Below, piece after piece: positions 16,422-34,092 of a DNA stretch of 64,000 nt. Both the position numbers and the translations under genes were made by a program. A model generated the notes under the pieces. It was not told the DNA's origin. It did not search any database and worked only from the letters and a program-made list of their open reading frames with translations. The first letter of the stretch is position 1; every line of letters starts with the position of its first letter. The stretch covers positions 193,179-257,178 of the IMG/VR virus record IMGVR_UViG_3300011113_000805; one strand, written 5' to 3'.

Positions 16422-16913
16422 CTATTTTCCGGACTGGAGGTGTTCAACCAGCCACTTAGCTTGGACTTCGTACGAAGTAGCCTCGGCAGCCCGAGCAGCC
16501 CGAGCAGCAGCTCCAGCAGCACGAGCAGCCTCAGCAGCAGCCCAAGTAGCCCCAGCATCAGCAGCAGCAGCAGCCCAAGCAGCACGAGCAGCCCAAGCAG
16601 CAGCCCGAGCAACACGAGCAGCCCAAGCAGCAGCTTCCAGCTCCTCAGAAGTGATGCTCTTCTCATCCTCCAGCCACCGGTCCACCAAGGACAGGGCATG
16701 TGTCACACTCTGATCCGGCTCACGTCCTGATCGAGCCAGTGCCTCACCGGCACACCATCGGGAAAATGACACCAGGTCCCGATGGGTGATGATACCAATG
16801 TGCTCCCGGCCTTGCAGGAGGATGCAGTTGAGCTGGAGGTTTCGTGTCAGCTCTGCCTCAGACAGAGTCGTCTGCTCACCGGTGACGGGATCAACCAGGA
16901 CGTACTGGGTCAT
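16422..16913 (-). CDS. Ala-rich Imm5-like paralog
   Basis: GIITHRDLV.F.RWCA / VDRWLED / AAW-AAR tract / QA.WLVEHLQSGK. Confidence 0.8.
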   Translation of the reverse strand: MTQYVLVDPVTGEQTTLSEAELTRNLQLNCILLQGREHIGIITHRDLVSFSRWCAGEALARSGREPDQSVTHALSLVDRWLEDEKSITSEELEAAAWAARVARAAAWAARAAWAAAAADAGATWAAAEAARAAGAAARAARAAEATSYEVQAKWLVEHLQSGK

Positions 16914-16920
16914 GAGATAT

Positions 16921-16994
16921 CTCCGTGATGAGATCTGTTATTACGGTGCCGGCACTTTGTACAGGCACCGAGAGAAAATAGCTGAACTATTTTC
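16921..16994 (-). promoter_or_regulatory. Type B element with UP-region inverted repeat GAAAATAG-N5-CTATTTTC containing the upstream stop codon
   Basis: Representative full-length copy; palindromic spacer gtgccggcac. Confidence 0.75.
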
Positions 16995-17466
16995 CGGACT
17001 GGAGGTGCTCCACAAGCCACTTGGCTTGGGTTTCATATGAAGCAGCCTCAACAGCCCAAGCAGCCCGAGCAGCAGACCGAGCAGCCCAAGCAGCATCAGC
17101 AGCCCAAGTAGCATCAGCTGCAGCCCAAGCAGCCCAAGCAACATCAGCAGCATCAGCAGCAGCAGCCTCAGCAGCCCCAGCAGCAGCTTCCAGCTCCTCA
17201 GGAGTAACACTCTGCTGGTCCTCCAGCCATCGATCGACCATGGTCAGAGCATGGATCGACCTCTGATCAGGCTCATCCACCAGCAGCGTCAGCATCTCAC
17301 CGGCACACCACCGAGCAAATGCGACCAAGTCTCGGTGGGTGATGATGCCAATGTGCTCCCGGCCTTGCAGGAGCACGCAATTCTGTCTGAGGTTTCGTAT
17401 CAGTTCGACCTCAGGCAGAATCGACTGCTCACCGGTGACGGGATCGATCAAAGTGTACTGGTGCAT
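16987..17466 (-). CDS. Ala-rich Imm5-like paralog
   Basis: Family motifs; start MHQYTL. Confidence 0.8.
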   Translation of the reverse strand: MHQYTLIDPVTGEQSILPEVELIRNLRQNCVLLQGREHIGIITHRDLVAFARWCAGEMLTLLVDEPDQRSIHALTMVDRWLEDQQSVTPEELEAAAGAAEAAAADAADVAWAAWAAADATWAADAAWAARSAARAAWAVEAASYETQAKWLVEHLQSGK

Positions 17467-17538
17467 GTCGAGCTCCGTGATGAGATCTGTTATTATGGCT
17501 AAGCCACTTTGTACAGGTCCTGGGAGCAAATAGTTGAA

Positions 17539-18018
17539 CTATTTTCCGGACTGGAGGTGTTCAACCAGCCACTGAGTTTGAACTTCATATGAAGTAGCCC
17601 TGGCAGCAGTCTGAGCAGTCCGAGCAGCCCAAACAGCAGCCTCAGCAGCCCGATCAGCAGCCATGGTAGTAGTCCAAGAAGCAGCCTCAGCAGCCCGATC
17701 AGCAGCCATGGTAGCAGTCCGAGCATCATAAGCAGCAGCTACCAGCTCCTCAGAAGTGACGCTCTTCTCGTTCTCCAGCCACCGGTCCACCAAGGACAGG
17801 GCATGTGTCACCTTCAGGTCAGGCTCATCCACCAGCAGCGTCAACGTCTCACCGGCACACCATCGAGCAAAGGCGACCAGGTCCCGGTGGGTGATGATGC
17901 CCAGATGCTCATTCCCTCGAAGAAGGATGCAGCTGAGCTGGAGGTTTCGGGTGAGCTCAAGCTCCGACAGAGTCGTCTGCTCACCGGTGACGGGATCGAT
18001 CAAAGTGTACTGGTGCAT
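17539..18018 (-). CDS. Ala-rich Imm5-like paralog
   Basis: Family motifs; start MHQYTL. Confidence 0.8.
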   Translation of the reverse strand: MHQYTLIDPVTGEQTTLSELELTRNLQLSCILLRGNEHLGIITHRDLVAFARWCAGETLTLLVDEPDLKVTHALSLVDRWLENEKSVTSEELVAAAYDARTATMAADRAAEAASWTTTMAADRAAEAAVWAARTAQTAARATSYEVQTQWLVEHLQSGK

Positions 18019-18090
18019 GTCAAGCTCCGTGATGAGATCTGTTATTATGGCTGAGCCACTTTGTACAGGTCCTGGGAGCAAATAGTTGAA

Positions 18091-18567
18091 CTATTTTCCG
18101 GACTGGAGGTGCTCCACAAGCCACTGAGCTTGAGACTCGTACAAAAGCCCACGACTCCCAGCATCCCAAGCAGCCCCGGCAGCAGCCCAAGCAGCAGCCC
18201 CAGCAGTCCGAGCAGCCTCAGCAGCCTCAGCAGCAGCCCGAGCAGCCCGAGCAGCCTGAGCAGCCCGAGCAGCAGCCCCAGCAGCAGCTTCCAGCTCCTC
18301 AGGTGTAACACTCTGCTGATCCTCAAGCCACTGGTCCACCAAGGACAGGGCATGTGTCACCTTCAGGTCAGGCTCATCCACCAGCAGCGTCAGCGTCTCA
18401 CCGGCACACCATCGAGCAAAGGCGACCAGGTCCCGGTGGGTGATGATGCCCAGATGCTCATTCCCTCGAAGAAGGATGCAGCTGAGCTGGAGGTTTCGGG
18501 TGAGGTCGATCTCAGACAGAAAAGTTTGCTTACCGGTGACAGAATCAACCAAGGTGTACCGGGACAT
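18091..18567 (-). CDS. Ala-rich Imm5-like paralog
   Basis: Family motifs. Confidence 0.8.
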   Translation of the reverse strand: MSRYTLVDSVTGKQTFLSEIDLTRNLQLSCILLRGNEHLGIITHRDLVAFARWCAGETLTLLVDEPDLKVTHALSLVDQWLEDQQSVTPEELEAAAGAAARAAQAARAARAAAEAAEAARTAGAAAWAAAGAAWDAGSRGLLYESQAQWLVEHLQSGK

Positions 18568-18638
18568 GAGAACTCCGTGATGAGATCTGTTATTTCGGCT
18601 GAGTCGCTTTGTACAGGCGCCGACGGAAAATAGCTGAA

Positions 18639-19172
18639 CTATTTTCCGGACTGGAGGTGCTGCTCAAACCACTGAGCTTGGACTTCGTATGAAGTAGCTC
18701 CGGCAGCAGCTCCAGCAGCCCGAGCAGCCCAAACAGCAGCCTCAGCAGCCCGATCAGCAGCCATGGTAGCAGCCCAAGAAGCAGTCTGAGCAGCAGCATG
18801 AGCAGCCCAAGCAGCAGTCTGAGCAGCAATATGAGCAGCCCAAGAAGCCCGAGCAGCAGCCCAAGCAGCCTGAGCAGCTGCTTCAGCAGCGTCTTTCAGC
18901 TCCTCATTGCTGAGGCTCCTCTCATCCTCCAGCCACCGGTCCACCAAGGACAGGGCATGTGTCACCTTCAGGTCAGGCTCATCCACCAGCAGCTTCAGCA
19001 TCTCACCGGCACACCATCGAATGAAGATGACCAGGTCCCGGTGGGTGATGATGCCCAGATGCTCATTCCCTCGAAGAAGGAGGTAGCCAATCTGGAGGTT
19101 TCGGGTGAGCTTAAGCTCCGACAGAGTCCACTGCCGGCCGGTGGCAGGATCAATCAAAGTGTATTTAGGCAT
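18639..19172 (-). CDS. Ala-rich Imm5-like paralog
   Basis: Family motifs. Confidence 0.8.
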   Translation of the reverse strand: MPKYTLIDPATGRQWTLSELKLTRNLQIGYLLLRGNEHLGIITHRDLVIFIRWCAGEMLKLLVDEPDLKVTHALSLVDRWLEDERSLSNEELKDAAEAAAQAAWAAARASWAAHIAAQTAAWAAHAAAQTASWAATMAADRAAEAAVWAARAAGAAAGATSYEVQAQWFEQHLQSGK

Positions 19173-19260
19173 TTCCGAAGCTCCGTGATGAGATCTGTTA
19201 TTATGGCTGAGCCACTTTGTACAGGTCCCGGGAGCACTTTTCTAAAAATGTTTACTCCTT

Positions 19261-19628: not shown

Positions 19629-19713
19629 TGGTAGCCCCAGCCGGACTCGAACCGGCACGCTCAATGAACAAGAGATTTTGAGTCTCTCGCGTCTTCCGTT
19701 CCGCCATGGGGCC
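19629..19713 (-). tRNA. trnL: tRNA-Leu(CAA)
   Basis: Cloverleaf, long variable arm, CT-CAA-AA loop, GTTCGA, CCA. Confidence 0.92.
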
Positions 19714-19720
19714 AATGAAG

Positions 19721-19795
19721 TGGTGGGTCATCCGAGACTCGAACTCGGAACTAACGGATTAAGAGTCCGCTACTCTACCATTGAGTTAATGACCC
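19721..19795 (-). tRNA. trnK: tRNA-Lys(CTT)
   Basis: CT-CTT-AA loop, T arm, CCA. Confidence 0.95.
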
Positions 19796-19800
19796 GAAGA

Positions 19801-19876
19801 TGGTGGGTTGTCTGGGGCTTGAACCCAGGGCCTACGGATTAAAAGTCCGCTGCTCTACCGACTGAGCTAACAACCC
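19801..19876 (-). tRNA. trnK: tRNA-Lys(TTT)
   Basis: CT-TTT-AA loop, CCA. Confidence 0.95.
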
Positions 19877-19880
19877 ATAA

Positions 19881-19968
19881 TGGAGGAAGCGGTGGGATTC
19901 GAACCCACGATCCCTTTCAGGATGCCGGTTTTCAAGACCGGAGCCTTAAACCGCTCGGCCACGCTTCC
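19881..19968 (-). tRNA. trnS: tRNA-Ser(TGA)
   Basis: CT-TGA-AA loop, long variable arm, CCA. Confidence 0.95.
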
Positions 19969-19972
19969 AAGA

Positions 19973-20047
19973 TGGTACTCCCAACGGGAATCGAACCCGT
20001 GTTACCGGAGTGAAAATCCGGTGTCCTGACCGTTAGACGATGGGAGC
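19973..20047 (-). tRNA. trnE: tRNA-Glu(TTC)
   Basis: TT-TTC-AC loop, CCA. Confidence 0.95.
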
Positions 20048-20050
20048 GAA

Positions 20051-20124
20051 TGGTTGGGGTGGTAGGATTCGAACCCACATAGCCTGATCCAAAGTCAGGC
20101 GTCCTGCCGTTGGACGACACCCCA
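20051..20124 (-). tRNA. trnQ: tRNA-Gln(TTG)
   Basis: CT-TTG-GA loop, U1-A72, CCA. Confidence 0.95.
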
Positions 20125-20141
20125 GTAATGAAAGAATGAAG

Positions 20142-20218
20142 TGGTGCTGAAGGTGGGAATCGAACCCACGGCCTGCGGTTTACAAGACCGCTGCTCTGGC
20201 CAACTGAGCTACTTCAGC
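20142..20218 (-). tRNA. trnT: tRNA-Thr(TGT)
   Basis: CT-TGT-AA loop, CCA. Confidence 0.95.
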
Positions 20219-20460
20219 ATTTTCTCGGCCGTCGCCAGCGACTCATTCACATGAACCCAGCTGCCCTCCCGCAGGAGGATGACACAACCTCCGATAGGCC
20301 AATCCAACAGGGTCGGCGGCAACATGTTCCAGCTGCTCACCCCTGGAGGAAGAGGGTAAGGAATGCAGGTGAGGATCTCATCCCGAGTAAAGACCCGTTC
20401 GGGATAAGTCCACCCGCCGCCGGGGCCAGGGGTAACAATGCTGAAGGTGAGCTCTTCCAC
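20209..20460 (-). CDS. Hypothetical protein inside the tRNA cluster
   Basis: GTG start after GAGG; type A promoter at about 20482-20510; stop lies within tRNA-Thr. Confidence 0.5.
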   Translation of the reverse strand: MEELTFSIVTPGPGGGWTYPERVFTRDEILTCIPYPLPPGVSSWNMLPPTLLDWPIGGCVILLREGSWVHVNESLATAEKMLK

Positions 20461-20542
20461 GTCGACGTCCTCAGGATTAGAATATAATCACTTTGGTGAT
20501 TTTGAACAGGCGGTGCCTGCACTTTCTTCAACTTTTCTTGAG

Positions 20543-20618
20543 TGGCTCCGGCAACAGGACTCGAACCTGTGACCCGCGGATTAACAGTCCGCTGCTCTAC
20601 CGACTGAGCTATGCCGGA
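20543..20618 (-). tRNA. trnN: tRNA-Asn(GTT)
   Basis: CT-GTT-AA loop, CCA. Confidence 0.95.
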
Positions 20619-20623
20619 ATAAG

Positions 20624-20700
20624 TGGTCTCCTCGACAGGACTTGAACCTGTGACCCCCGCGTTAGGAATGCGGTGCTCTATCCAACTGAGCTACGAGGAG
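20624..20700 (-). tRNA. trnR: tRNA-Arg(CCT)
   Basis: TT-CCT-AA loop, A31-C39 mismatch, CCA. Confidence 0.9.
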
Positions 20701-20740: not shown

Positions 20741-21835
20741 TCACTTCTTCTTGTCGTTGATGGCCTGGGCGGCCTGGATGACGCTCATGATCTGGTCCTT
20801 CACCAGACCGTGAAACATCTTGATGTTGTTGCTGTTGCCGCTGCTCATGACACCGCTGTGCAGCGCCATCTTGCACTCACCGGTGAGGATGTCGAAGAAC
20901 TTCTTGAGGTTCCCCGCCTGGGCCAGGGTCCACTTGTTCTCCTTCGAGTGGTCCTTGATCTTTTCGATGATCGCCATCTTGCGCTCGGTGCTGAGCTCAC
21001 CGATACGGGCCTCCACCTTGGACCACCGGTTGAGGACGTCCTCCGCCGTGATGACGCTGCTGTAGTTCTTGACAAAGTCGACCAGGGCCGCGGAGGCCTC
21101 GACACCAACGAACCCCAGGGAGAGGGGGTAGAGGATGGCAGGAGGATTGCCACCGCATTCGGTGAGCTCGATGGCGGCCGCCTTCAGAGCACGGTCGAGC
21201 ATCGCCCAGGAGCGCTGGCTGGGAGCCACCTTGCCGGGCTCCACGGCCTTGGTGGGGCGGAGGTGAGCAGGCTGCAGCCGAATGAAGTCGATCAGCAGTT
21301 CATTGATGTCGCCCTCGGTCTTCGCCCAAACGAGCCAGTCCTCCACCGAGGGCTTGAACTCGACCACCCAGAACCGGCTCAGGAGGGCCGGGTCCATCTC
21401 GGAGACGGTGTAGTCACCGCCCCAGTTCACTGCCGCAACCACCTGGGTGCCCGGGTGCAGGCGCTTGGGCTTGCCGTCGGGACCGGACCCGAGCTCACGA
21501 TCCAGGACGATCTGGAACATGCTGTTCAGCACGCCGGGCAGGCCGCGGTTGAGCTCATCGAGGAAGAGGACGCAGGGCTCGTTGCAGGCCCGAACGTACC
21601 ACGACGGCAGCGCGAAGGAGGCGACACCGGTTTCCTTCGTACGCTCGAGGTCGGGGTAGCCGACGACATCACCTTCGGACATCGTGGAGGCACGCACGTC
21701 GATGAGCTCGAGGCCGCGGCGGTGGGCGAGCTGGTGAACGAGCTGGGACTTGCCAACACCGTGGTCGCCGCGGATGAGCACAGCCTGTGCGGCCGGGAGT
21801 GCATTGAGGCAGGTGACGAGGGTCTTCGCGTCCAT
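20741..21835 (-). CDS. MoxR-like AAA+ ATPase
   Basis: Walker A GDHGVGKS, Walker B LFLDELNR, MDPALLSRF. Confidence 0.88.
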   Translation of the reverse strand: MDAKTLVTCLNALPAAQAVLIRGDHGVGKSQLVHQLAHRRGLELIDVRASTMSEGDVVGYPDLERTKETGVASFALPSWYVRACNEPCVLFLDELNRGLPGVLNSMFQIVLDRELGSGPDGKPKRLHPGTQVVAAVNWGGDYTVSEMDPALLSRFWVVEFKPSVEDWLVWAKTEGDINELLIDFIRLQPAHLRPTKAVEPGKVAPSQRSWAMLDRALKAAAIELTECGGNPPAILYPLSLGFVGVEASAALVDFVKNYSSVITAEDVLNRWSKVEARIGELSTERKMAIIEKIKDHSKENKWTLAQAGNLKKFFDILTGECKMALHSGVMSSGNSNNIKMFHGLVKDQIMSVIQAAQAINDKKK

Positions 21836-21947
21836 GATGACGTCCTTTTCCTGAGGGTTTGTGGGGTTTCGGAACCATTCCGCCCCAACAAGATGAATAT
21901 AATCACTTTCGGTCAAGTTGAACAGGTACCGGAGCACCTTTTTGCAA

Positions 21948-22250
21948 CTATTTTCCGATCAACTTGAAATGCCTGATGTGCAACTCGAGGATCTCGCCCT
22001 CGTACATGACCTTCACATACACGTTGCGGAGGGCAAGGTTATCGGTGGCCACCATCCCCAGCCCGAAGATCCAGACCGTCGGCCCTTCGACAATGACGCC
22101 AATGGCGCCGCGACCCATGTGGGGAATCGAAACCAACGCGCCGGGAACCCAGGCTTTGTTGGTGATCGTCCGGTTCTGTCCAGGACCCTTCTGGTGAACC
22201 ACCCGTTTCTTGGGCTGAATGGGCTTTTCACTCAGTGTGCGACGCTTCAT
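21948..22250 (-). CDS. Hypothetical protein
   Basis: ORF whose TAG lies in the UP element of the next promoter. Confidence 0.55.
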   Translation of the reverse strand: MKRRTLSEKPIQPKKRVVHQKGPGQNRTITNKAWVPGALVSIPHMGRGAIGVIVEGPTVWIFGLGMVATDNLALRNVYVKVMYEGEILELHIRHFKLIGK

Positions 22251-22441
22251 CAGGGGCTCCTCGAATAGAAACGTATGCGATTTTTCGTCAGAGAGCAGGA
22301 CATCTTGTGTCCACCGCGCGGATATTGTTCAGATGCTCCCTCGCGCCGACCAGGACATCCTGGGCAGTCTTCGTGCTCAGGCCAGTCCTTGCCATCCGCC
22401 TGCCGGGTGGCCTTGTTGTCGAAGTCATCTTCGTCGTTCAT
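22250..22441 (-). CDS. Small hypothetical protein
   Basis: Type B element upstream. Confidence 0.5.
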   Translation of the reverse strand: MNDEDDFDNKATRQADGKDWPEHEDCPGCPGRREGASEQYPRGGHKMSCSLTKNRIRFYSRSP

Positions 22442-22538
22442 ATTCCTCTCCGCGATGATATCTGTTATTATGGTCGGAGGGTTTTGTACAGGTCCGGGGA
22501 CACCTTTTTTGAAGGAATTTTCCCCGGACCTGCACCGG

Positions 22539-23288
22539 TCAGGACTCCTCGGAAGCCGCCACCTCGAAGCCGTGACGGCCCAGGCTCAGCCAGCTGGTCC
22601 GACCGGTACCGCCGAAGCGGTTCTTGGTCACCTCGAACTTGCGATGACCGATGAGGGTCTTGTCCTTCTTCTCCCAGCCGAGGTGGATGTGGCAGTCGAT
22701 CATGTGCTTCATCTTGTTGCTGCCGGCGAAGGTGCCGCCCTTCGTCACCTGGCCGATGGTGATGACGTTGGTGAAGTTCTCCTTCGCCCAGGTGGTGAGC
22801 TTCTCCAGGGAGCGCTCGGCGGTCCAGCAGGTGATCCGGCCGGTGTCGAACTTGCCATCATCCAGGCACTGGAGGGAGTCGACCATGAGGAAGAAGGGCT
22901 TGCCCTTGTTCTCGGGACGATTGCGGATGGCGTCCGCCGCCTCGATGAGCTTGTCGACGTGGGTCTCACCGCCGACGAGGAAGTTGGGGTCGATGCCGAG
23001 GCGGTCCACGGTGCGCTTCACCTGGAAGAGGCTCTCCTCCGCCGTGTTGAAGAGGACCACGCTGCCGTTCTCGGTGAGGCCGGAGGCCATCGTCAGGAGG
23101 GCCGTGGTCTTGCCGGCGCCGGGCTCGCCGGTGAACATCGTCACCATCGACGGGGTGAACCCCTCGCCACCGAGGCCCTCATCGATCCACTCGATGCCGG
23201 AGAGGTGACGCTTCAGGAGCTCCATCGGCACGCGAACGTCGTTGATGTTGGTACCAACCGCGAAGGTGTCGGAGAACGAGATACGCAT
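22539..23288 (-). CDS. radA: RadA/Sms-like RecA-fold ATPase (no Zn finger, no Lon-like domain)
   Basis: GEPGAGKT, AEES, VDSLQ, GQVTKGG.FAG, KNRFG signature. Confidence 0.8.
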   Translation of the reverse strand: MRISFSDTFAVGTNINDVRVPMELLKRHLSGIEWIDEGLGGEGFTPSMVTMFTGEPGAGKTTALLTMASGLTENGSVVLFNTAEESLFQVKRTVDRLGIDPNFLVGGETHVDKLIEAADAIRNRPENKGKPFFLMVDSLQCLDDGKFDTGRITCWTAERSLEKLTTWAKENFTNVITIGQVTKGGTFAGSNKMKHMIDCHIHLGWEKKDKTLIGHRKFEVTKNRFGGTGRTSWLSLGRHGFEVAASEES

Positions 23289-23434
23289 GTGTATGATGTC
23301 CTTTTCCTGAGGGTTTGTGGGGTTCCGGAACCATTCCGCCCCAACAAGATGAATATAATCACTTTCGGGTCAGTGGGACAGGTCTCCGGAGCACCTTTTT
23401 GCACATTTTTGTGCAGTGCTCCGGAGATAGCGTG

Positions 23435-23638
23435 TCACCGCCGGCGCCCGACAGAACCGGCAGAGGCATTGAGAATGGACTCGTACTCCCGATCATCATC
23501 GTCCTGGAGCGCTCGAAGCGCGGAGATAATGCGATCGAGGTCCCCGCTTTCGAGGTGGCCATCAGTCGACAGACTGACATAGCCTTCCTTGTCACGATCG
23601 ATGTACACAATCACAGAACCAATGGGCATGTTCTTCAT
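23435..23638 (-). CDS. Hypothetical protein
   Basis: Start MKNMPIG after GGAG. Confidence 0.55.
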   Translation of the reverse strand: MKNMPIGSVIVYIDRDKEGYVSLSTDGHLESGDLDRIISALRALQDDDDREYESILNASAGSVGRRR

Positions 23639-24140: not shown

Positions 24141-24659
24141 CTATTTTCCGGACTGGAGATGCTCGACCCACCACTGGGCCTGGGCTTCATATGAAGTGTA
24201 ATCCCGAGAAACCTGAGAAGTAGCCATGGCTGCATTTGAAGCCCCGTCACCATACACAGCTGCACGCTGCGCGGCAGCCTGGGCAGTCCAAGTGGCAGTT
24301 CGGGCAGCAACAAAAGCAACCAGTGGCGCAGCATCAGTAATAGCAGGAGCAGCAGCCCAAGCAGCAGCACGAGCAGCCGCTTCCAGCTCCTCAGAAGTGA
24401 CGCTCTTCTCATCTTCAAGCCACCGGTCCACCAAGGACAATGCATGGGCCACCCTCTGATTAGGCTCGCCTTTCAATCGAGCCAGCGTCTCATTGGTGCA
24501 CCATCGAGCGAAGAGAACTAAGTCTCGGTGAGTGACGATACCGAGGTGCTCCTGGTCTCGGAAGAGAATACAGTTGAGCCTGATATTTTGGGTAAGCTCA
24601 AGCTCCGACAGCGTGTGCTGCTCGCCGGTGACAGGATCGATCAGGGTGTACCGGGCCAT
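24141..24659 (-). CDS. Ala-rich Imm5-like paralog
   Basis: Family motifs; start MARYTL. Confidence 0.8.
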   Translation of the reverse strand: MARYTLIDPVTGEQHTLSELELTQNIRLNCILFRDQEHLGIVTHRDLVLFARWCTNETLARLKGEPNQRVAHALSLVDRWLEDEKSVTSEELEAAARAAAWAAAPAITDAAPLVAFVAARTATWTAQAAAQRAAVYGDGASNAAMATSQVSRDYTSYEAQAQWWVEHLQSGK

Positions 24660-24733: not shown

Positions 24734-25198
24734 TTATTGAGCCGACCTCAGGTGCTCCACCAGCCATTGGGCTTGGGCTTCGAAGGAAACACCGGCAGAG
24801 TTATTAGCAGCCCATGCAGCAGACCCAGCAACATCAGCAGCGCCGGCAGCACTAGAAGCAGCCCAAGCAGCCCGCGCAGCAACAGCACCAGGGCAAGCAA
24901 CATCAGCAGCGGCAGCAGCCTGTTTCAGCTCCTCACTGGAGGCAGAACCCGGGTCGATCAGCCACTTGTCGACCAGGCCCAGCGCAGTATAGACTTCAGG
25001 GGGAACCGTGTGACACTGAGCAAGAGTCTTCTCAACACACCACCGACAGAAGGAGACAACATCGCGATGTGTGATGACGCCGATGTGTTCATCCCCACGA
25101 AGGAGGATATGATTGACCCGCATATGATGTGTCAGTTCCGACGCAGCTACCGTCGACGTGCCACCGGTGAATGGATTCAGGAGGGTATACCGGGTCAT
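24734..25198 (-). CDS. Ala-rich Imm5-like paralog
   Basis: Family motifs; start MTRYTL; TAA stop. Confidence 0.8.
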   Translation of the reverse strand: MTRYTLLNPFTGGTSTVAASELTHHMRVNHILLRGDEHIGVITHRDVVSFCRWCVEKTLAQCHTVPPEVYTALGLVDKWLIDPGSASSEELKQAAAAADVACPGAVAARAAWAASSAAGAADVAGSAAWAANNSAGVSFEAQAQWLVEHLRSAQ

Positions 25199-27366: not shown

Positions 27367-27530
27367 TGTGTCACATTGTGCCGGATCGAATGAAAGTATC
27401 TATCCAGAGCGGGGGTCGGAGTCAATGATTTTTCTATCCCGGGGGCCCTAGGATTCTGGTGGATCGCTGTGTCACATTGTGCCGGATCGAATGAAAGTAT
27501 CTATCCGGAGCGGGGGTCGGAGTCAATCAT
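27297..27530. repeat. 101-bp-period tandem repeat (about 2.3 copies)
   Basis: atctatccRgagcgggggtcgRagtcaat at 27297, 27398, 27499. Confidence 0.85.
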
Positions 27531-29529: not shown

Positions 29530-30015
29530 TTATTGACCGGACTGGAGGTGTTCAACCAGCCACTGAGCTTGGGCTTCATATGAAACAGCCCAAGTAGCAC
29601 GAGCAGCCCAAGTAGCATGAACAGTAGCCCGAGCAACATCAGAAGCAGCCCAAGCAGCCCGAGCAGCAGCCCAAGCAGTAGCCCGAGCAGCAGCCCGAGC
29701 AGTAGCCCCAGCATCCCAAGCATCAAAAGCAGCAGCTACCAGCTCCTCAGAAGTGATGCTCTTCTCATTCTCCAGCCACCGGTCCACCAAGGACAGGGCA
29801 TGTGTCACAGTGTGATCCGGTTCACATTTCAGTCGAGCCAAAATCTTACCAGCGCACCACCGAGTGAAGATGACTAGGTCCCGGTGGGTGATGATTCCCA
29901 AATGCTCCCGGCCTTGAAGAAGAACGCAATTGAGCTGAAGGTTTTGGGTGAGCTCTGCCTCAAACAGAGTCGTCTGCCGGCCGGTGACCGGATCAATCAA
30001 TGTGTATTGGGCCAC
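29530..30015 (-). CDS. Ala-rich Imm5-like paralog
   Basis: Family motifs; GTG start. Confidence 0.8.
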   Translation of the reverse strand: MAQYTLIDPVTGRQTTLFEAELTQNLQLNCVLLQGREHLGIITHRDLVIFTRWCAGKILARLKCEPDHTVTHALSLVDRWLENEKSITSEELVAAAFDAWDAGATARAAARATAWAAARAAWAASDVARATVHATWAARATWAVSYEAQAQWLVEHLQSGQ

Positions 30016-30088
30016 GTCAAATCTCCGTGATGAGATCTGTTATTTCAGCACCGGCACTTTGTACAAGCGCCGAGAGAAAATAGCTGAA

Positions 30089-30574
30089 CTATTTTCCGGA
30101 CTGAAGGTGTTCAACCAGCCACTGAGCCTGAGACTTGTAAGAAAGCCCACGATCCTCAGCAGACCGAGCAACATCAGCAGCAACCCAAATAGCCCGAGCA
30201 GCCCGAGCAGCAGCCCAAGCAGCATCAGCAGCAGCCCAAATAGCCCGAGCAGCGTCAGCAGCATCAACAGCAGCCCAAGCAACCTCAGCGACGGCTTCCA
30301 GCTCCTCAGGAGTAACTCTCTTTTCATCCTCCAGCCACCGATCGACCAGGGTCAAGGCATACTGTGCCTCAGGAGTCGATGTGCCCTTCGCTCGAGCAAT
30401 TGCCTCCATGGCACACCACCGAGCAAAGGCGACCAAGTCTCGGTGGGTGATGATACCAATGTGCTCCCGGCCTTGCAGGAGGATGTAGTTAGGAGCGAGG
30501 TTTTGTGTCAGCTCGACCTCAGACAGAGTCGTCTGCTGGCCGGTAATAGGATCGATCAGTGTGTACAGGTGCAT
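30089..30574 (-). CDS. Ala-rich Imm5-like paralog
   Basis: Family motifs; start MHLYTL. Confidence 0.8.
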   Translation of the reverse strand: MHLYTLIDPITGQQTTLSEVELTQNLAPNYILLQGREHIGIITHRDLVAFARWCAMEAIARAKGTSTPEAQYALTLVDRWLEDEKRVTPEELEAVAEVAWAAVDAADAARAIWAAADAAWAAARAARAIWVAADVARSAEDRGLSYKSQAQWLVEHLQSGK

Positions 30575-30647
30575 GTCGAGCTCCGTAATGAGATCTGTTA
30601 TTACAGTGCCGGCACTTTGTACAGGCACCGCGAGCAAATAGTCGAAA

Positions 30648-31151
30648 CTATTTTTCGGACCGCAGATGCTCCACCAGCCACTGAGCTTGGACTTCGTACG
30701 AAGCAGTCTGAGTAGCCCGAGTAACCCAAGCAGTCCGAGCAGCAGCCCGAGTAGCCCAAGCAACAGCCTCAGCAGCAGCCCAAGCAGCCCCAGCAACAGC
30801 CTCAGTAGTAGCTCCAGCAGCCCAAGCAACAGCCTCAGCAGCCTGAGCAGCCCCAGCAGCCCGAGCAGCAGCTTCCAGCTCCTCAGGAGTAACACTCTGC
30901 TGGTCCTCCAGCCACCGGTCCACCAAGGACAGGGCATGTGTCACCTTCAGGTCAGGCTCATCCACCAGTCGAGCCAGCATCTTACCAGCGCACCACCGAG
31001 CAAAGGCGACCAAGTCTCGGCGGGTGATGATGCCAATGTGCTTCCTATCTTGAAGAAGAATGCAATTGAGCTGAAGGTTTCGTGTCAGCTCTGCCTCAGA
31101 CAGAGTCGTCTGCTGGCCGGTGGCAGGATCGATCAGTGTGTATTGGGCCAT
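30648..31151 (-). CDS. Ala-rich Imm5-like paralog
   Basis: Family motifs. Confidence 0.8.
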   Translation of the reverse strand: MAQYTLIDPATGQQTTLSEAELTRNLQLNCILLQDRKHIGIITRRDLVAFARWCAGKMLARLVDEPDLKVTHALSLVDRWLEDQQSVTPEELEAAARAAGAAQAAEAVAWAAGATTEAVAGAAWAAAEAVAWATRAAARTAWVTRATQTASYEVQAQWLVEHLRSEK

Positions 31152-31225
31152 GTCAAATCTCCGTGATGAGACCTGTTATTTCAGTACCGGCACTTTGTAC
31201 AGGTCCTGGGAGCAAATAGTCGAAA

Positions 31226-31768
31226 CTATTTTCCGGACTGGAGGTGTTCAACCAGCCAACATGCTTGGGCTTCATATGAAGCAATCTCAGTAGCCTCAGC
31301 AGCCCAAGCAGCCCGAGCAGCAGCCCAAGCAGCCTGAGCAGCAAACCGAGCAGCCTCAGCAGCAGCCCAAGCAGCCTCAACAGCCCAAGCAGCCCGAGCA
31401 GCAGCCCAAGCAGCCCCAGCAACAGCCTGAGCGGCAGTCCAAGCAGCAGCCTCAGCAGTCCGAGCAGCCCAAGCAGCATCAGCAGCAGCTTTCAGCTCCT
31501 CAGGAGTAACACTCTGCTGATCCTCCAGCCACTGGTCGACCATGGTCAGAGTATGTGTCACCTTCAGGTCAGGCTCATCCACCAGTCGAGCCAGCATCTT
31601 ACCAGCGCACCACCGAGCAAAGGCGACCAAGTCTCGATGGGTGATGATGCCAATGTGCTCCCCATCTCGAAGGAGGATGCAGCCAATCTGGAGGTTTCGG
31701 GTGAGCTCTACCTCAGACAGAGTCGTCTGCCGGCCGGTGGCAGGATCGATCAGTGTGTATTGGGCCAT
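31226..31768 (-). CDS. Ala-rich Imm5-like paralog
   Basis: Family motifs. Confidence 0.8.
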   Translation of the reverse strand: MAQYTLIDPATGRQTTLSEVELTRNLQIGCILLRDGEHIGIITHRDLVAFARWCAGKMLARLVDEPDLKVTHTLTMVDQWLEDQQSVTPEELKAAADAAWAARTAEAAAWTAAQAVAGAAWAAARAAWAVEAAWAAAEAARFAAQAAWAAARAAWAAEATEIASYEAQACWLVEHLQSGK

Positions 31769-31841
31769 GTCAAATCTCCGTGATGAGACCTGTTATTTCA
31801 GTACCGGCACTTTGTACAGGTCCCGGGAGCAAATAGCTGAA

Positions 31842-32327
31842 CTATTTTCCGGACTGGAGGTGCTCAACAAACGTTTGTGCTTGAGCTTCATAAGTGATGA
31901 TAGCATGATAATCAAGTGACCAGGCTATTTCAGCAATAATCTCCAAGGCCCAATTAGCATTGGCAATAACCCGCACCGGAGAAGCAATAATCCAATCCGG
32001 TGACCATATAGAAGTCTCACCATTGGTGATCACATATCCTGCAATGAAGTCAAGTTGTTCACAGGACAGGCTATTTGGATCCTCTAACCATTGATCGGCT
32101 AGCTGTATAGCATACAAAGAATCTGGTTCCGGTAGTTCGATCATCCGATTCTTTATCACATCTGCACACCGTCGAGCGAAGACGACCAAGTCTCTATATG
32201 TAACGACACCAATATGGTTATTCCCTTGAAGAAGAATGCAATTAAGCATAAGATTTTGCAATAGCTCGGTTTTAGGTACAGTTTTGCTAAAGCCTGTGAA
32301 AGGATTGATTAGAGTGTAATGGATCAT
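31842..32327 (-). CDS. Divergent Imm5-like paralog (non-repetitive middle)
   Basis: Family N- and C-termini; Ala tract replaced by AT-rich sequence. Confidence 0.75.
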   Translation of the reverse strand: MIHYTLINPFTGFSKTVPKTELLQNLMLNCILLQGNNHIGVVTYRDLVVFARRCADVIKNRMIELPEPDSLYAIQLADQWLEDPNSLSCEQLDFIAGYVITNGETSIWSPDWIIASPVRVIANANWALEIIAEIAWSLDYHAIITYEAQAQTFVEHLQSGK

Positions 32328-32399
32328 AGGAATTCCATGATGAGATCTGTTATTACAGTGCCGGCACTTTGTACAGGCACCGCGAGCAAATAGTCGAAA

Positions 32400-32525
32400 C
32401 TATTTTTCGGACCGCAGATGCTCCACCAGCCACTGAGCTTGAGACTTGTTGTGCTCCTCATCTCGAAGGAGGATGCAATCCTGCCTGAGGTTTCGTGTCA
32501 GCTCGACCTTGGACAGGTCGCCCAC
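32400..32525 (-). pseudogene. In-frame deletion remnant of an Imm5-like paralog
   Basis: LSKVELTRNLRQDCILLRDEEH fused to KSQAQWLVEHLRSEK*. Confidence 0.7.
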
Positions 32526-32533
32526 CGGCCGGG

Positions 32534-32959
32534 TCAGGCCACCCTCTTCGATCCGCCCTTCTTGGGGGCAACCGGGCCGCGGAAGACCAGGGTGTTGACC
32601 ACTCCCAAGTACCCGATCGGCTCCCCCTCAGCAGCCTTCTGCATCGCCTCGGAGGCTACCTCGTCGAGGCCTTCGGACCCTGGCACGGAGAATGCCACGT
32701 CCACGTCAGAGTCGTCACGGAACCTGTTCCTCTCAAGAACGGAGCCGATGATCCACACGGACACCTCCTCCGCTGGGAGGTCGAGGACCTCCGCGGCCAG
32801 TTCCTTGAGGGAGGGTGCGGCGCCGGCCACGGCGCGGATGGCATCCTTTCTGTACGCGTCGAGGTCGGGGTCTTGGGAGGCAAGGACCTCGTTGAGGGAA
32901 TGTGTCACTTCTTCACGGATGATAGACTTGAGCTTGGATAACTTTATCTTCATGGGCAA
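32534..32959 (-). CDS. Leader-bearing minimal nucleotidyltransferase (Pol-beta/MNT fold)
   Basis: IIGSVL...DSDVDV; leader LSKLKSIIREEV...LNE. Confidence 0.75.
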   Translation of the reverse strand: MPMKIKLSKLKSIIREEVTHSLNEVLASQDPDLDAYRKDAIRAVAGAAPSLKELAAEVLDLPAEEVSVWIIGSVLERNRFRDDSDVDVAFSVPGSEGLDEVASEAMQKAAEGEPIGYLGVVNTLVFRGPVAPKKGGSKRVA

Positions 32960-33042
32960 TAAGTATGTCTGCCGCCGAGAAACCCATTAAAGAATAAAAG
33001 CGGGTCAAGTCGTGCGGGCTGTTTGGAGCAACTTTTGTATCT

Positions 33043-33525
33043 TTATTGACCAGACTTCAGGTGTTCCACAAACCACTGTGCCTGAGACTTGTAAGAAAGC
33101 CCACGATCCTCAGCAGACCGAGCAACATCAGCAGCAGCCTCAGCAGCGTCAGCAGCATCAACAGCAGCCCAAATAGCCTCAGCAGCAGCCCAAGCAGCCC
33201 GAGCAGCAGCCTCAGCACCAGCCCGAGCAGCAGCCTTAGCAGCGTCTTTCAACTCCTCAGAAGTGATGCTTAGCTCATCATCCAGCCACTGGTCGACCAT
33301 GGTCAGAGCATGCGTCACCTTCAGGTCAGGCTCATCCACCAGTCGAGCCAGCATCTTACCAGCGCACCACCTAGCAAAGGCGACCAAGTCTCGGTGGGTG
33401 ATGATGCCAATGTGCTCCCCATCTCGAAGAAGGATGCAGTTGAGCTGGAGGTTTCGTGTCAGCTCGACCTCAGACAGAGTCGTCTGCCAGCCGGTGGCAG
33501 GATCAATCAAAACATAGTCAGGCAT
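33043..33525 (-). CDS. Ala-rich Imm5-like paralog
   Basis: Family motifs. Confidence 0.8.
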   Translation of the reverse strand: MPDYVLIDPATGWQTTLSEVELTRNLQLNCILLRDGEHIGIITHRDLVAFARWCAGKMLARLVDEPDLKVTHALTMVDQWLDDELSITSEELKDAAKAAARAGAEAAARAAWAAAEAIWAAVDAADAAEAAADVARSAEDRGLSYKSQAQWFVEHLKSGQ

Positions 33526-33600
33526 GTCCAGGACTCCGTGATGAGATCTGTTATTTCGGCTGAGTCGCTTTGTACAGGCACCGCGAGCAAATAGTCGAAA

Positions 33601-34092
33601 CTATTTTTCGGACCGCAGATGCTCCACCAGCCAACGTGCTTGGGCTTCATATGAAGCAATCTCAGCAGCAATCTCGACAGCAGCCCAAGTAGCATGAGCA
33701 GCGGCCTGAGCAGCCGTGGTAGCAGCCCAAGCAGCCCGAGCAGCAGCCCAAGCAGTAGCCCGAGCAGCAGCCCGAGCAGCAGCCCCAGCATCCCAAGCAT
33801 CAAAAGCAGCAGCTTCCAGCTCCTCATTGCTGACGCTCTGTTGGTCCTCCAACCACCGGTCGACCAGGATCAAGGCATACTGCGTCTCAGGAGCAGGTGT
33901 GCCCTTCACTCGAGCCAGTGTCTCAACTGCTAGCCATCGAACAAAGACAACCAGATCCCTATGGGTAACAATGCCAATATGCTCATTCTCTCGAGCAAGA
34001 ATGTCATTGCTGGCTATTTTTCGTGTTAGATCATGCTCTTGTACAATTTTGTTCATTCCCGTAATGGGATTAATTAGTGTATACTCTGTCAT
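33601..34092 (-). CDS. Ala-rich Imm5-like paralog
   Basis: Family motifs. Confidence 0.8.
   Translation of the reverse strand: MTEYTLINPITGMNKIVQEHDLTRKIASNDILARENEHIGIVTHRDLVVFVRWLAVETLARVKGTPAPETQYALILVDRWLEDQQSVSNEELEAAAFDAWDAGAAARAAARATAWAAARAAWAATTAAQAAAHATWAAVEIAAEIASYEAQARWLVEHLRSEK

What the first reader, a model, noticed from the sequence alone, without database searches (positions are those of the whole stretch)
16422..34092. Fifteen-member, individually promoted Ala-rich (Imm5-like) paralog array with a hypervariable tract
Seen: three arrays (5 at 16.4-19.2 kb, 2 at 24.1-25.2 kb, 7 plus a remnant at 29.5-34.1 kb) and one at 10.8 kb. Conserved N-domain and C-cap surround a tract of AAx triplets (x = W, R, E, D, Q, G) built from GCT-rich 9-nt units, which differs in length and order in every copy. 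The RDL..FA.WCA / AL..V.RWL / EL.AA pattern recalls Imm5-like helical proteins (from memory, not searched). Inference: a diversifying binder library (anti-defence, superinfection exclusion or antitoxin) expressed strongly and early.
Basis: partly seen in the sequence, partly recalled or inferred. Interest (0 to 1): 0.85.

Follow-up and report, generated by a model that had tools for sequence, protein, structure and literature searches.

The report
Phage array of hypervariable Imm5-like proteins
A 257-kb uncultured phage carries 15 copies of a small protein distantly related to bacterial anti-toxin "immunity" proteins; each copy has its own conserved expression cassette and an alanine-rich repeat stretch that mutates very fast, which suggests a library of binding proteins, though what they bind has not been tested.

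Summary
The minus strand carries 15 intact paralogs, arranged 5 + 2 + 7 plus one divergent copy at 10.8 kb. There is also a truncated remnant at 32403-32510.

A profile-profile match to proteins carrying Pfam PF21805 gives 97.9% probability and E 5e-13, and the best viral structural match is an Imm-5-like protein. No copy reaches Pfam's own threshold, and each has an extra N-terminal beta domain.

The conserved parts are under purifying selection (dN/dS about 0.25, dS about 0.8). Several copies have one-to-one orthologs in a related 252-kb phage.

The Ala tract is built from 9- and 12-nt units. Its third codon positions are nearly frozen (GCT is 94% of Ala codons) while positions 1 and 2 vary. 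Between orthologs the tract is 62% identical with many indels, against 95% for the flanks. The one copy without repeats is stable. Repeat instability therefore drives the variation.

Fourteen copies carry a 45-nt cassette that is not sigma-70-like. It also precedes unrelated genes and is more conserved than the coding sequence.

The function (a binder or polyimmunity-like library) and early expression are inferences only. An unexpected linkage to a MoxR-ATPase/DUF2201 peptidase gene pair suggests a rival role.

The parts
33601..34092 (-). Paralog, first gene of array 3 (163 aa)
   Evidence: HMM E 1.5e-68. Ortholog of L003:7598 in the related phage. The only copy without the cassette.
34110..34139 (-). 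Sigma-70-like promoter candidate (TTGTAA-18-TATAAT, with TG before the -10) ahead of the first paralog
   Evidence: Best match of the consensus scan, 10 of 12. Sequence read. Consensus match only.
33043..33525 (-). Paralog (160 aa); the copy that was modelled
   Evidence: AF2 pLDDT 91, pTM 0.87: four-strand beta domain followed by six helices.
32403..32510 (-). Remnant copy, 5'-truncated with an internal deletion
   Evidence: HMM positions 17-38 and 149-163 only. Translation and DNA read.
31842..32327 (-). Ala-poor paralog (161 aa; tract 15% Ala, not repetitive)
   Evidence: BLASTP E 4e-30 to copy 33043. Its tract is 95% nt identical, with no gaps, to its ortholog L003:9415.
31226..31768 (-). 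Paralog (180 aa; longest tract, 71 aa)
30648..31151 (-). Paralog (167 aa)
30089..30574 (-). Paralog (161 aa; the 282-aa ORF call is an upstream read-through)
   Evidence: The start codon lies after the cassette. Ortholog L003:11970.
29530..30015 (-). Paralog (161 aa, GTG start), last gene of array 3
24734..25198 (-). Paralog (154 aa), array 2
   Evidence: Weak DUF6931 hit, E 0.02.
24141..24659 (-). Paralog (172 aa), array 2
18639..19172 (-). Paralog (177 aa), first gene of array 1
   Evidence: Weak Imm5_like hit, E 0.19.
18091..18567 (-). Paralog (158 aa)
17539..18018 (-). Paralog (159 aa)
16987..17466 (-). Paralog (159 aa)
16422..16913 (-). Paralog (163 aa), last gene of array 1
10776..11291 (-). 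Divergent family member (171 aa) without an Ala tract; cassette at 11297-11340
   Evidence: BLASTP E 8e-13. Upstream sequence read.
16921..16965 (-). Representative 45-nt expression cassette: CCTGTACAAAGTG, 11-nt variable spacer, WAATAACAGATCTCATCACGGAG, then 5-8 nt to the ATG. Before paralogs it also lies at 17473-17517, 18025-18069, 18573-18617, 19181-19225, 24665-24709, 25204-25248, 30023-30067, 30581-30625, 31159-31203, 31776-31820, 32333-32377, 33534-33578. Before unrelated genes it lies at 12567-12611, 13732-13776, 14454-14498; partial copies lie at 12224-12246, 22448-22470, 23685-23713, 24090-24118.
   Evidence: 18 matches against 0 expected for each half. ORFs downstream listed. 96% identity outside the spacer, against 65% at four-fold sites. 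Not sigma-70-like.
16914..16945 (-). Region between the 16422-16913 start codon and the cassette. The stop-codon hairpin of the upstream copy (GGAAAATAG-loop-CTATTTTCC) lies at about 16970-16995. It recurs after most copies.
   Evidence: Sequences. RNA folds with a 7-11 bp stem in 4 of 4 tested junctions. Function not tested.
14548..15894 (-). DUF2201 protein (HExxH metallopeptidase-like plus VWA-like), one ORF downstream of array 1; possible functional partner
   Evidence: Pfam DUF2201_N E 4.5e-17, DUF2201 E 3.5e-8. The neighbourhood recurs in a second phage clade.
20741..21937 (-). MoxR-type AAA+ ATPase (AAA_5), the usual partner of DUF2201
   Evidence: Pfam AAA_5 E 1.7e-14. Paired with DUF2201 in all 12 loci fetched.
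19629..20700 (-). Array of nine tRNA genes between arrays 1 and 2 (context)
   Evidence: ARAGORN and Rfam. No tRNA for Ala, Trp or CGG-Arg.

Best explanation
**Shown**
- The window comes from an uncultured 257-kb phage contig. It carries a 15-member family of small cytoplasmic proteins.
- Each protein has a family-specific N-terminal four-strand beta domain fused to an all-helical domain. The helical domain belongs to the Imm5_like/DUF6931 superfamily.
- The conserved framework is under purifying selection, and individual paralogs are kept as orthologs in a related phage.
- The central helices are encoded by GCT-based 9- and 12-nt repeats. These repeats expand, contract and recombine in frame. 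As a result, the length of the tract and the order of its large or charged residues (W, R, E, D, Q, G, T, V) change far faster than the rest of the gene.
- Nearly every copy has the same highly constrained 45-nt upstream cassette with a GGAG ribosome-binding site. The cassette is shared with other small genes of this 12-34 kb region.

**Inferred**
- The proteins are a repertoire of binders. The constant scaffold presents a fast-evolving helical surface.
- By analogy with Imm5-type immunity proteins and bacterial polyimmunity loci, each copy sequesters a different variable host or competitor effector (a toxin or defence protein) in the infected cell.
- The repeat-based tract acts as a built-in generator of new specificities, and the copies are expressed as separate units.
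For: - **Family and layout:**
- **Superfamily link:** hhalign 97.9%, E 4.9e-13 over residues 34-159. Among the 119 proteins of alignment A2 (the window copies, their relatives and distant hits of the family profile), 21 match Imm5_like and 25 match DUF6931, and no other family recurs. BFVD top hit is an Imm-5-like protein, TM 0.53, probability 1.0. Atlas neighbours are viral Imm5_like clusters.
- **Confident fold:** pLDDT 91 overall, with the tract forming three helices at pLDDT 76-79.
- **Purifying selection outside the tract:** median dN/dS 0.25 at dS 0.8.
- **Orthologous pairs across two phages:**
- **Tract hypervariable between orthologs:** 62% nt identity with 50 gap columns, against 95% and no gaps in the flanks. 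The non-repetitive tract of copy 31842 is 95% identical with no gaps.
- **Clean 150-nt in-frame tract indel** between two samples of the related phage.
- **Frozen third positions:** GCT 364/388, CGG 40/50, ACT 36/41, against mixed usage in the flanks.
- **Excess of non-synonymous one-step neighbours of GCT:** 108 against 24 synonymous, p 1.4e-4.
- **Same codon monotony in distant Imm5_like/DUF6931 genes:** GCT+NAT or GCC+NAC.
- **Cassette:** 18 against 0 expected matches, 96% against 65% identity, and present before unrelated genes.
- **Imm5 and polyimmunity loci** as defined in PMC3482391.
- **Residue repertoire:** W, R, Y, D, S and G are typical of protein-binding hot spots (general knowledge, not tested here).
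Against: - No copy reaches Pfam's Imm5_like cut-off (best 12.1 against 25 bits).
- The immunity function of Imm5 itself is a genomic prediction, and no experimental paper on Imm5_like was found.
- No toxin or recognisable defence-related partner lies near the arrays.
- No relatives were found in 185,579 species genomes, so there is no host and no cellular toxin context.
- The fast change of the tract can be explained by repeat instability alone.
- The dN>dS signal counts duplicated units as if they were independent.
- Whether the x residues are exposed could not be measured, because no coordinates were returned.
- Expression level and timing are unknown.
- Linkage to the MoxR/DUF2201 pair points to a possibly different role.
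Confidence: 0.45

Rival explanations
1. The proteins are accessory factors (adaptors, regulators or inhibitors) of the phage's MoxR-type AAA+ ATPase and DUF2201 VWA/metallopeptidase pair. The variable tract would select which proteins are handed to, or protected from, that machine. Alternatively it simply regulates the peptidase.
For: - In a second, distant phage clade a single DUF6931/Imm5-like gene directly follows DUF2201 and overlaps it, in the order AAA_5 - DUF2201 - DUF6931 (L015, L021/L025, L018). L020/L033 has a rearranged order.
- Starting from DUF2201 as query, 5 of 9 non-redundant foreign loci have a family member within 2.5 kb.
- In the window, array 1 is one ORF away from DUF2201, and the ATPase lies at 20741-21937.
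- In the related phage, copies flank DUF2201 on both sides.
Against: - The association is limited to two DUF2201 clades. Four more divergent DUF2201 loci have no family member within 5 kb.
- Imm5_like clusters in other phages (L009, L010, L022) have no DUF2201 within 6-10 kb.
- Conserved synteny in phage modules can persist without any functional coupling.
- Most of the 15 copies lie 8-18 kb away from DUF2201.
Confidence: 0.2
2. The copies share one conserved function unrelated to variable binding, and are kept in many copies for dosage or as a structural or regulatory factor working through the N-terminal domain. The tract variability is a neutral by-product of unstable GCT repeats in a tolerant helical spacer.
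For: - Hypervariability tracks repetitiveness. The non-repetitive copy is stable.
- Codon monotony is the signature of unit expansion.
- pLDDT is lower in the tract.
- Two family members do without the Ala tract altogether.
Against: - Distinct paralogs are retained as orthologs across phages instead of being homogenised.
- Among one-step neighbours of GCT, amino-acid-changing codons outnumber synonymous ones 108 to 24.
- Every one of 14 tracts stays in frame and helical.
- The Ala-x pattern is conserved across very distant relatives.
Confidence: 0.2
3. The proteins act in competition between phages (superinfection exclusion), or are antitoxins for toxins encoded by the phage itself.
For: Only the general analogy with immunity and antitoxin proteins and the location among small accessory genes.
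Against: - No toxin-like gene was detected next to any copy.
- The proteins have no membrane or secretion signals visible in the sequences.
- Nothing specific supports exclusion.
Confidence: 0.08
4. The variation is written by a diversity-generating retroelement or another targeted mutator.
For: Variation concentrates in codon positions 1-2 of the x codons while the third base is fixed.
Against: - No reverse-transcriptase-like ORF in the window.
- The x codons are restricted to NGG/NAG instead of covering all NNG.
- Indels in multiples of 9 and 12 nt dominate.
- There are 15 targets and no template repeat.
- The rest of the 257-kb genome was not examined.
Confidence: 0.02
5. Assembly artefact or decaying pseudogenes.
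For: The related 252-kb scaffold ends inside an array, and one scaffold has an N gap inside a cassette. Exact copy number and order could therefore be affected by assembly.
Against: - The copies differ by dS 0.8 and are under purifying selection.
- All 15 are intact.
- The same family and layout appear in IMG/VR, several ENA samples and an NCBI assembly.
Confidence: 0.02

Closest known systems
Pfam PF21805 Imm5_like and PF22011 DUF6931 (uncharacterised, mostly phage-encoded; related to Imm5, PF14423)
   Same: - Same helical core motifs: V.FA.(F/W)CA; (I/V)..(R/K/E)WL.(D/G)..(S/A).(T/S).EE(L/C)..AA; and a C-terminal Q..(W/Y)(L/Y).(E)(H/L)L.
- Same Ala-rich tract of variable length with one non-Ala residue every 3-4 positions.
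- Same single-codon monotony in the tract.
- Found in small-gene regions of phages, sometimes 3-4 copies together.
   Different: - Scores below Pfam's thresholds.
- Has an extra N-terminal beta domain of about 43 residues.
- The x residues are W/R/E/D/G, encoded NGG/NAG, where relatives have Y/N/D/H encoded NAT/NAC.
- 15 copies with individual cassettes, against 1-4 copies elsewhere.
Homogeneous polyimmunity loci of bacteria (Zhang et al. 2012, PMC3482391)
   Same: - Tandem, same-orientation paralogs of one predicted immunity family.
- No toxin genes interspersed.
- Short intergenic distances.
- Content differs between close strains.
   Different: - Encoded by a lytic-type jumbo phage, not by a bacterium.
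- Split into three arrays.
- Each gene appears to be its own expression unit, not part of a polycistron.
- Imm5 was not listed among the families that form such loci.
- No recombinase seen nearby.
- No toxin context at all.
Repeat-driven contingency genes (in-frame tandem repeats that vary by slippage or unequal recombination; general knowledge)
   Same: - Variation arises from unstable in-frame repeats.
- Length polymorphism between populations.
- Stability once the repeats are lost.
   Different: - The repeats encode a folded helical domain of a cytoplasmic phage protein, where classical cases encode a surface-protein spacer or an on/off switch.
- Unit shuffling changes the pattern of exposed side chains.
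Diversity-generating retroelements of phages
   Same: A phage-encoded way of diversifying a binding protein on a constant scaffold.
   Different: No reverse transcriptase or template repeat seen, no adenine-specific pattern, and many targets.
Multigene families of large eukaryotic DNA viruses (for example poxvirus ankyrin/F-box families and 'genomic accordions'; general knowledge)
   Same: Tandem expansion of a helical-repeat binder family in a large viral genome, presumably under an arms race.
   Different: A bacterial virus, an unrelated fold, and no known link to a degradation pathway beyond the DUF2201/MoxR neighbourhood.

Membership tests
Pfam PF21805 Imm5_like | Score at or above Pfam's gathering cut-off (25 bits) | tested here: not met
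   Best window copy scores 12.1 bits, E 0.19. The modelled copy has no hit at E 0.1.
Pfam PF21805 Imm5_like | Profile-level homology to proteins that carry the domain | tested here: met
   hhalign of A1 (15 window copies) against A3 (32 proteins with precomputed PF21805): probability 97.9%, E 4.9e-13, 120 aligned columns including the non-Ala motifs. The Ala-rich composition may inflate the score.
Pfam PF21805 Imm5_like | Shared architecture: conserved helices, then a variable Ala-x tract, then a conserved C-terminal helix | tested here: met
   Alignments. Codon monotony shared.
Pfam PF21805 Imm5_like | Similar predicted fold | tested here: inconclusive
   BFVD top hit A0A6J5RNF9, an Imm-5-like domain protein: TM 0.53, probability 1.0, but E 0.019. 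No PDB relative exists.
Imm5 immunity proteins sensu Zhang et al. 2012 (PF14423) | Encoded next to a DYW-deaminase or CdiA-CT toxin that it neutralises | tested here: not met
   No toxin domain in any neighbouring ORF scanned. No relatives in cellular genomes.
Imm5 immunity proteins sensu Zhang et al. 2012 (PF14423) | Toxin-neutralising activity | not testable with these tools
   Needs co-expression or binding assays.
Homogeneous polyimmunity locus | Four or more tandem same-strand paralogs of one immunity family, uninterrupted by toxin genes | tested here: met
   Arrays of 5 and 7. The only interruption is an MNT-like ORF plus the remnant.
Homogeneous polyimmunity locus | Content varies between close strains | tested here: met
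   A 150-nt tract indel and a 290-bp conversion-like patch between samples of the related phage.
Homogeneous polyimmunity locus | Resides in a bacterial genome exposed to polymorphic toxins | tested here: not met
   The contig is IMG/VR UViG 3300011113_000805, 257 kb, phage-like.
DGR variable protein | Nearby reverse transcriptase and template repeat with adenine-specific substitutions | tested here: not met
   No RT-like ORF in the window. The x codons are NGG/NAG only. The rest of the genome was not seen.
CBS domain (N-terminal 45 residues) | Pfam CBS score above cut-off, or CBS fold | tested here: not met
   Only a motif-level resemblance (iLL..EHiGIITHRDLV): Pfam E 0.22 and 0.025. Seven of the ten best PDB sequence hits are CBS proteins, but the best E is 0.015. 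The AF2 model of the domain (pLDDT 94.5) finds no CBS structure.

The most novel reading that the evidence does not exclude
The Ala-x tract is an evolved diversity generator that needs no reverse transcriptase and is common to the whole phage Imm5_like/DUF6931 superfamily. A single-codon repeat scaffold (GCT or GCC) keeps slippage and unit shuffling in frame and helical. Phages can therefore continually produce new binding surfaces. In this jumbo phage the system has been expanded into a 15-gene, separately expressed repertoire that neutralises variable host defence or toxin effectors, or delivers them to the MoxR/VWA-peptidase machine. It would be a phage counterpart of an innate binder repertoire.
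Probability: 0.2. Interest if true: 0.85.

Novelty: new variant of a known kind. Interest (0 to 1): 0.62.

Why it matters
Phage counter-defence is mostly known as single dedicated inhibitors. A large repertoire of one scaffold that varies itself would be a different strategy. It would also give a function to a widespread but unstudied phage protein superfamily (Imm5_like/DUF6931).

The family-wide frozen-codon repeat tract is a simple sequence signature. It could be used to find such genes, and to follow their evolution in time-series metagenomes.

The conserved 45-nt cassette defines a transcription or translation class in an uncultured jumbo phage.

The recurrent linkage to a MoxR ATPase and a VWA-metallopeptidase pair offers a concrete, testable partner for both gene sets, neither of which has a known role in phages.

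Tried and rejected
- **GenBank phages:** no DNA or protein match to the family.
- **PDB:** no sequence or structural relative of the whole protein.
- **PADLOC:** no hit for the family.
- **Literature:** nothing on Imm5-like, PF21805 or DUF6931 in phages, and nothing useful on DUF2201.
- **CBS-domain idea for the N-terminal domain:** the motif-level hits are consistent but sub-threshold. The fold search found no CBS structure. It is kept only as a resemblance.
- **Sigma-70 reading of the cassette:** the spacing between TGTACA and the TAAT-like element is about 12-14 nt, and the scan does not call it.
- **Conserved RNA or DNA hairpin in the cassette spacer:** some copies are palindromic (GTGCCGGCAC, GTGACGTCAC), others are not. 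Folds are inconsistent.
- **DGR:** rejected.
- **Host identification through prophage relatives:** two scans of species genomes found nothing.
- **Genome-wide alignment of L003 against L005:** failed because of an offset. Replaced by BLAST pieces and a direct gene comparison.
- **Surface mapping of the x residues:** not possible, because model coordinates are not returned.

Full report
**1. What is in the sequence**

The minus strand between 10.8 and 34.1 kb carries 15 intact members of one protein family and one remnant.
- Array 1 has five genes (16422-19172).
- Array 2 has two genes (24141-25198).
- Array 3 has seven genes (29530-34092).
- A divergent member lies at 10776-11291 (BLASTP E 8e-13 to a typical copy).
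- The remnant at 32403-32510 keeps only HMM positions 17-38 and 149-163. It abuts a small ORF with a nucleotidyltransferase-like GS...DxD motif.
- The 14 close copies score 1e-63 to 1e-75 against the family HMM.

The window belongs to IMG/VR contig UViG_3300011113_000805, 257,178 bp. That contig also carries:
- nine tRNA genes;
- a MoxR-type AAA_5 ATPase, and a DUF2201 metallopeptidase/VWA protein;
- a KaiC/RecA-like ATPase;
- an RNA ligase.

The region holding the family is richer in G+C (0.48-0.60) than its flanks (about 0.40-0.45).

**2. Anatomy of the proteins**

Each protein has 92 conserved N-terminal residues, a tract of 46-71 residues, and a 17-residue C-terminal cap (SYE.QAQWLVEHLQSGK).

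AlphaFold2 with a 119-sequence alignment gives a confident model (pLDDT 91, pTM 0.87). It shows a small four-strand beta unit with one short helix (residues 4-41) followed by six helices. The tract forms three helices at pLDDT 76-79.

In the tract, Ala makes up 41-65% of residues in 13 copies. Large or charged residues recur every 3 (78 cases) or 4 (61 cases) positions, which is a heptad-like pattern. Copy 31842-32327 has a non-repetitive tract with 15% Ala, and the 10.8-kb copy has no Ala tract.

**3. The tract at the DNA level**

TRF finds periods of 9, 12, 21 and 30-45 nt in every Ala-rich copy.

Third codon positions are almost frozen in the tract, while the flanks of the same genes use mixed codons:

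| Codon family | Tract | Flanks of the same genes |
|---|---|---|
| Ala | GCT 364 of 388 | GCC 39 of 88 is the commonest |
| Thr | ACT 36 of 41 | mixed |
| Val | GTT 27 of 32 | mixed |
| Ser (TCN) | TCT 12 of 13 | mixed |
| Arg (CGN) | CGG 40 of 50 | CGA 37 of 74 is the commonest |
| Gly | GGG 16 of 25 | mixed |

The tract is therefore built from two codon types. One is GCT and its one-step derivatives (ACT, GTT, TCT, GAT). The other is an NGG/NAG class (TGG, CGG, GGG, GAG, CAG).

Among one-step neighbours of GCT, amino-acid-changing codons outnumber synonymous ones 108 to 24. The binomial p is 1.4e-4 against a one-third synonymous share. The units are not independent, so this result is only suggestive.

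**4. The same property in distant relatives**

Distant relatives from unrelated phage contigs show the same codon monotony, but the founder units differ by lineage:
- GCT with NAT codons: L009, L010, L014, L016.
- GCC with NAC/TCC codons: L015, L018.

The monotony is therefore a family-wide consequence of unit expansion. It is not a requirement for one particular codon.

**5. Evolution**

Outside the tract, 13 copies give a median dN/dS of 0.25 at dS 0.8. The duplicates are therefore old and constrained.

A related 252,691-bp scaffold (ENA GROS21-1 samples) has at least 15 copies in a similar multi-array layout and the same cassette.

A tree of the non-tract residues interleaves the two phages' copies. 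It recovers orthologous pairs: W_33601 with L003_7598, W_31842 with L003_9415 (support 100/98), and W_30089 with L003_11970.

These pairs were compared part by part:

| Pair | Part | nt identity | Gap columns |
|---|---|---|---|
| W_33601 / L003_7598 | flanks | 95% | 0 |
| W_33601 / L003_7598 | tract (54 vs 70 residues) | 62% | 50 |
| W_31842 / L003_9415 (Ala-poor copy) | tract | 95% | 0 |

This internal control ties the hypervariability to the repeats themselves.

Between samples of the related phage, one copy differs by a clean 150-nt in-frame indel inside the tract, with identical flanks. Another differs by a 290-bp patch of clustered substitutions that looks like conversion from a paralog. 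Assembly collapse cannot be excluded for these two observations: one scaffold ends in an array, and another has an N gap in a cassette.

**6. Expression signals**

Fourteen of the 15 copies are preceded by a 45-nt cassette: CCTGTACAAAGTG, an 11-nt variable spacer, WAATAACAGATCTCATCACGGAG, then 5-8 nt to the start codon.
- Each half matches 18 times in the window against 0 expected, always on the minus strand and only between 12.2 and 33.6 kb.
- The cassette also precedes unrelated small genes, with ORFs at 11931-12218, 12270-12560, 13525-13725, 14190-14447 and 22250-22441.
- Outside the spacer it is 96% identical among the paralogs' upstream regions. Four-fold degenerate sites are 65% identical, and codon positions 1+2 are 80% identical. 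It is therefore under its own constraint and is not merely dragged along by duplication.
- It does not fit sigma-70 geometry.
- Only the first gene of array 3 has a sigma-70-like site, TTGTAA-18-TATAAT at 34110-34139.
- The stop codon of most copies sits in a hairpin, GGAAAATAG-loop-CTATTTTCC.

That each gene is its own expression unit is a reasonable inference. Timing and strength were not testable.

**7. What family it is**

Pfam gives only sub-threshold hits: Imm5_like E 0.19 and DUF6931 E 0.02. PHROG 18326, of unknown function, matches at 4e-7.

An exhaustive profile search found 212 representatives. The distant ones align to positions 44-150 of the profile, and several pass Pfam's cut-offs for DUF6931 or Imm5_like. 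Alignment A2 holds 119 proteins: the window copies, their relatives and distant hits of the family profile. Of these, 25 match DUF6931 and 21 match Imm5_like, and no other family recurs.

hhalign of the 15 window copies against 32 proteins annotated PF21805 gives probability 97.9%, E 4.9e-13. The alignment covers the HRDLV.FARWCA, LVDRWLED..S.T.EEL..AA and Q.QWLVEHL motifs as well as the tract.

The best BFVD structural match is an Imm-5-like domain protein of an uncultured phage (TM 0.53). The nearest ESM Atlas clusters are viral and carry Imm5_like. There is no solved structure.

Two caveats apply: the Pfam threshold is not met, and the N-terminal beta domain is specific to this subfamily.

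That N-terminal domain shares a sequence motif with the beta2-beta3-alpha2 part of CBS domains. Its confident model retrieves no CBS structure, so I do not call it CBS.

**8. What is known about the family**

Imm5 was defined by comparative genomics as a mostly helical predicted immunity protein of DYW-deaminase and CdiA-CT toxins. Tandem arrays of immunity paralogs without toxins were named polyimmunity loci, and were proposed to pre-empt a changing set of toxins (PMC3482391).

I found no experimental or descriptive paper on Imm5_like or DUF6931 in phages.

The phage-type members have no relatives in 185,579 species genomes at the sensitivity used. They have none in GenBank phages either.

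**9. Mechanism proposed**

The shown and inferred parts of the proposal are set out under the best explanation. The inferred part rests on three things:
- the remote Imm5 relationship;
- the polyimmunity-like layout;
- the retention of distinct paralogs and the binder-like residue repertoire.

It stands at roughly 45% confidence.

**10. A lead that points elsewhere**

In a second, distant phage clade a single DUF6931/Imm5-like gene directly follows the DUF2201 gene, usually overlapping it, and DUF2201 in turn follows the AAA_5 ATPase gene. This is seen in L015, L021/L025 and L018, with a rearranged order in L020/L033.

Starting from DUF2201 as the query, 5 of 9 non-redundant foreign loci have a family member within 2.5 kb. 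The four more divergent DUF2201 loci have none within 5 kb.

In the window, array 1 lies one ORF from DUF2201. In the related phage, copies flank DUF2201 on both sides.

This could mean the proteins are adaptors or regulators of that ATPase/peptidase pair. It could equally be inherited synteny. Imm5_like clusters in other phages lack such neighbours.

**11. Rejected readings**

- *Assembly artefact or pseudogenes:* contradicted by the divergence between copies, purifying selection, and independent assemblies.
- *DGR:* no reverse-transcriptase-like ORF in the window, the wrong codon spectrum, and indel-dominated change.
- *The phage tRNAs serve the tract codons:* the nine tRNAs include none for Ala, Trp or CGG.

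**12. Verdict**

The main new facts are:
- repeat-driven hypervariability, with an internal control;
- the family-wide frozen-codon signature;
- orthologous retention of paralogs;
- a constrained cassette that is not sigma-70-like;
- the DUF2201/MoxR linkage.

Function remains inferred. I rate this a new variant of a known kind (a phage-borne, repeat-diversified, polyimmunity-like array of Imm5_like proteins), with interest about 0.6.

Noticed in passing
window 12224-14498 and 22448-24118 (minus strand): The same 45-nt cassette, or half of it, precedes unrelated small ORFs (11931-12218, 12270-12560, 13525-13725, 14190-14447, 22250-22441, and sites at 23685 and 24090). A degenerate version precedes the DUF2201 gene. 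It defines a regulatory class confined to about 12-34 kb of the window.
   Followed up: partly
window 14548-15894 and 20741-21937; loci L015, L018, L020/L033, L021/L025, L028-L030, L034: A DUF2201 (HExxH peptidase-like plus VWA) gene and an AAA_5 MoxR ATPase gene are always paired. In two phage clades they are next to Imm5-like/DUF6931 genes, and in one clade the reading frames overlap.
   Followed up: partly
window 32534-32950 (minus strand): A 138-aa ORF with a minimal nucleotidyltransferase motif (GS...DSDVDV; weak NTP_transf_2, E 0.024) sits inside array 3, directly upstream of the truncated paralog remnant. It looks as if its insertion destroyed a copy.
   Followed up: partly
window 19629-20700 (minus strand): Nine tRNA genes lie in a tight array between arrays 1 and 2: Leu-CAA, Lys-CTT, Lys-TTT, Ser-TGA, Glu-TTC, Gln-TTG, Thr-TGT, Asn-GTT, Arg-CCT. 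None reads the tract's dominant codons.
   Followed up: yes
window 10000-34000 compared with its flanks: G+C is 0.48-0.60 across the region holding the family, the tRNAs and the ATPase/peptidase genes, against about 0.40-0.45 on either side. Further G+C-rich patches lie at 42-44 kb and 60-64 kb.
   Followed up: no
window 27292-27527 and 26075-26127: A 101-nt tandem repeat (2.3 copies, 88% matches) and a perfect 21-nt repeat (2.5 copies) lie in the gene-poor stretch between arrays 2 and 3.
   Followed up: no
window 22539-23288 (minus strand): A KaiC/RecA-like P-loop ATPase (Pfam ATPase E 3.9e-11; weak PADLOC mad8 hit) lies between the tRNA array and array 2. A homologous 249-aa gene is present or absent between samples of the related phage (L004, L007 and L008 against L003 and L006).
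   Followed up: no
L001/L006 end of the 252,691-bp scaffold; L004 6384-6483: The related phage's scaffold ends inside a paralog array, and another sample's scaffold has a 100-N gap inside a cassette. The arrays break short-read assemblies, so copy numbers are lower bounds.
   Followed up: partly
L006 14588-14873 against L007: Nearly all differences between two samples over 18.6 kb cluster in a 290-bp patch covering the cassette and N-terminal domain of one copy. This looks like gene conversion from a paralog, or a chimeric assembly.
   Followed up: partly
window 54197-55321 and 56050-56961 (minus strand): An RNA ligase with an OB-fold domain (Pfam E 8e-23) and a PHROG 8420 endonuclease (E 1e-48). 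Most other large ORFs of the window have no Pfam or PHROG match.
   Followed up: no
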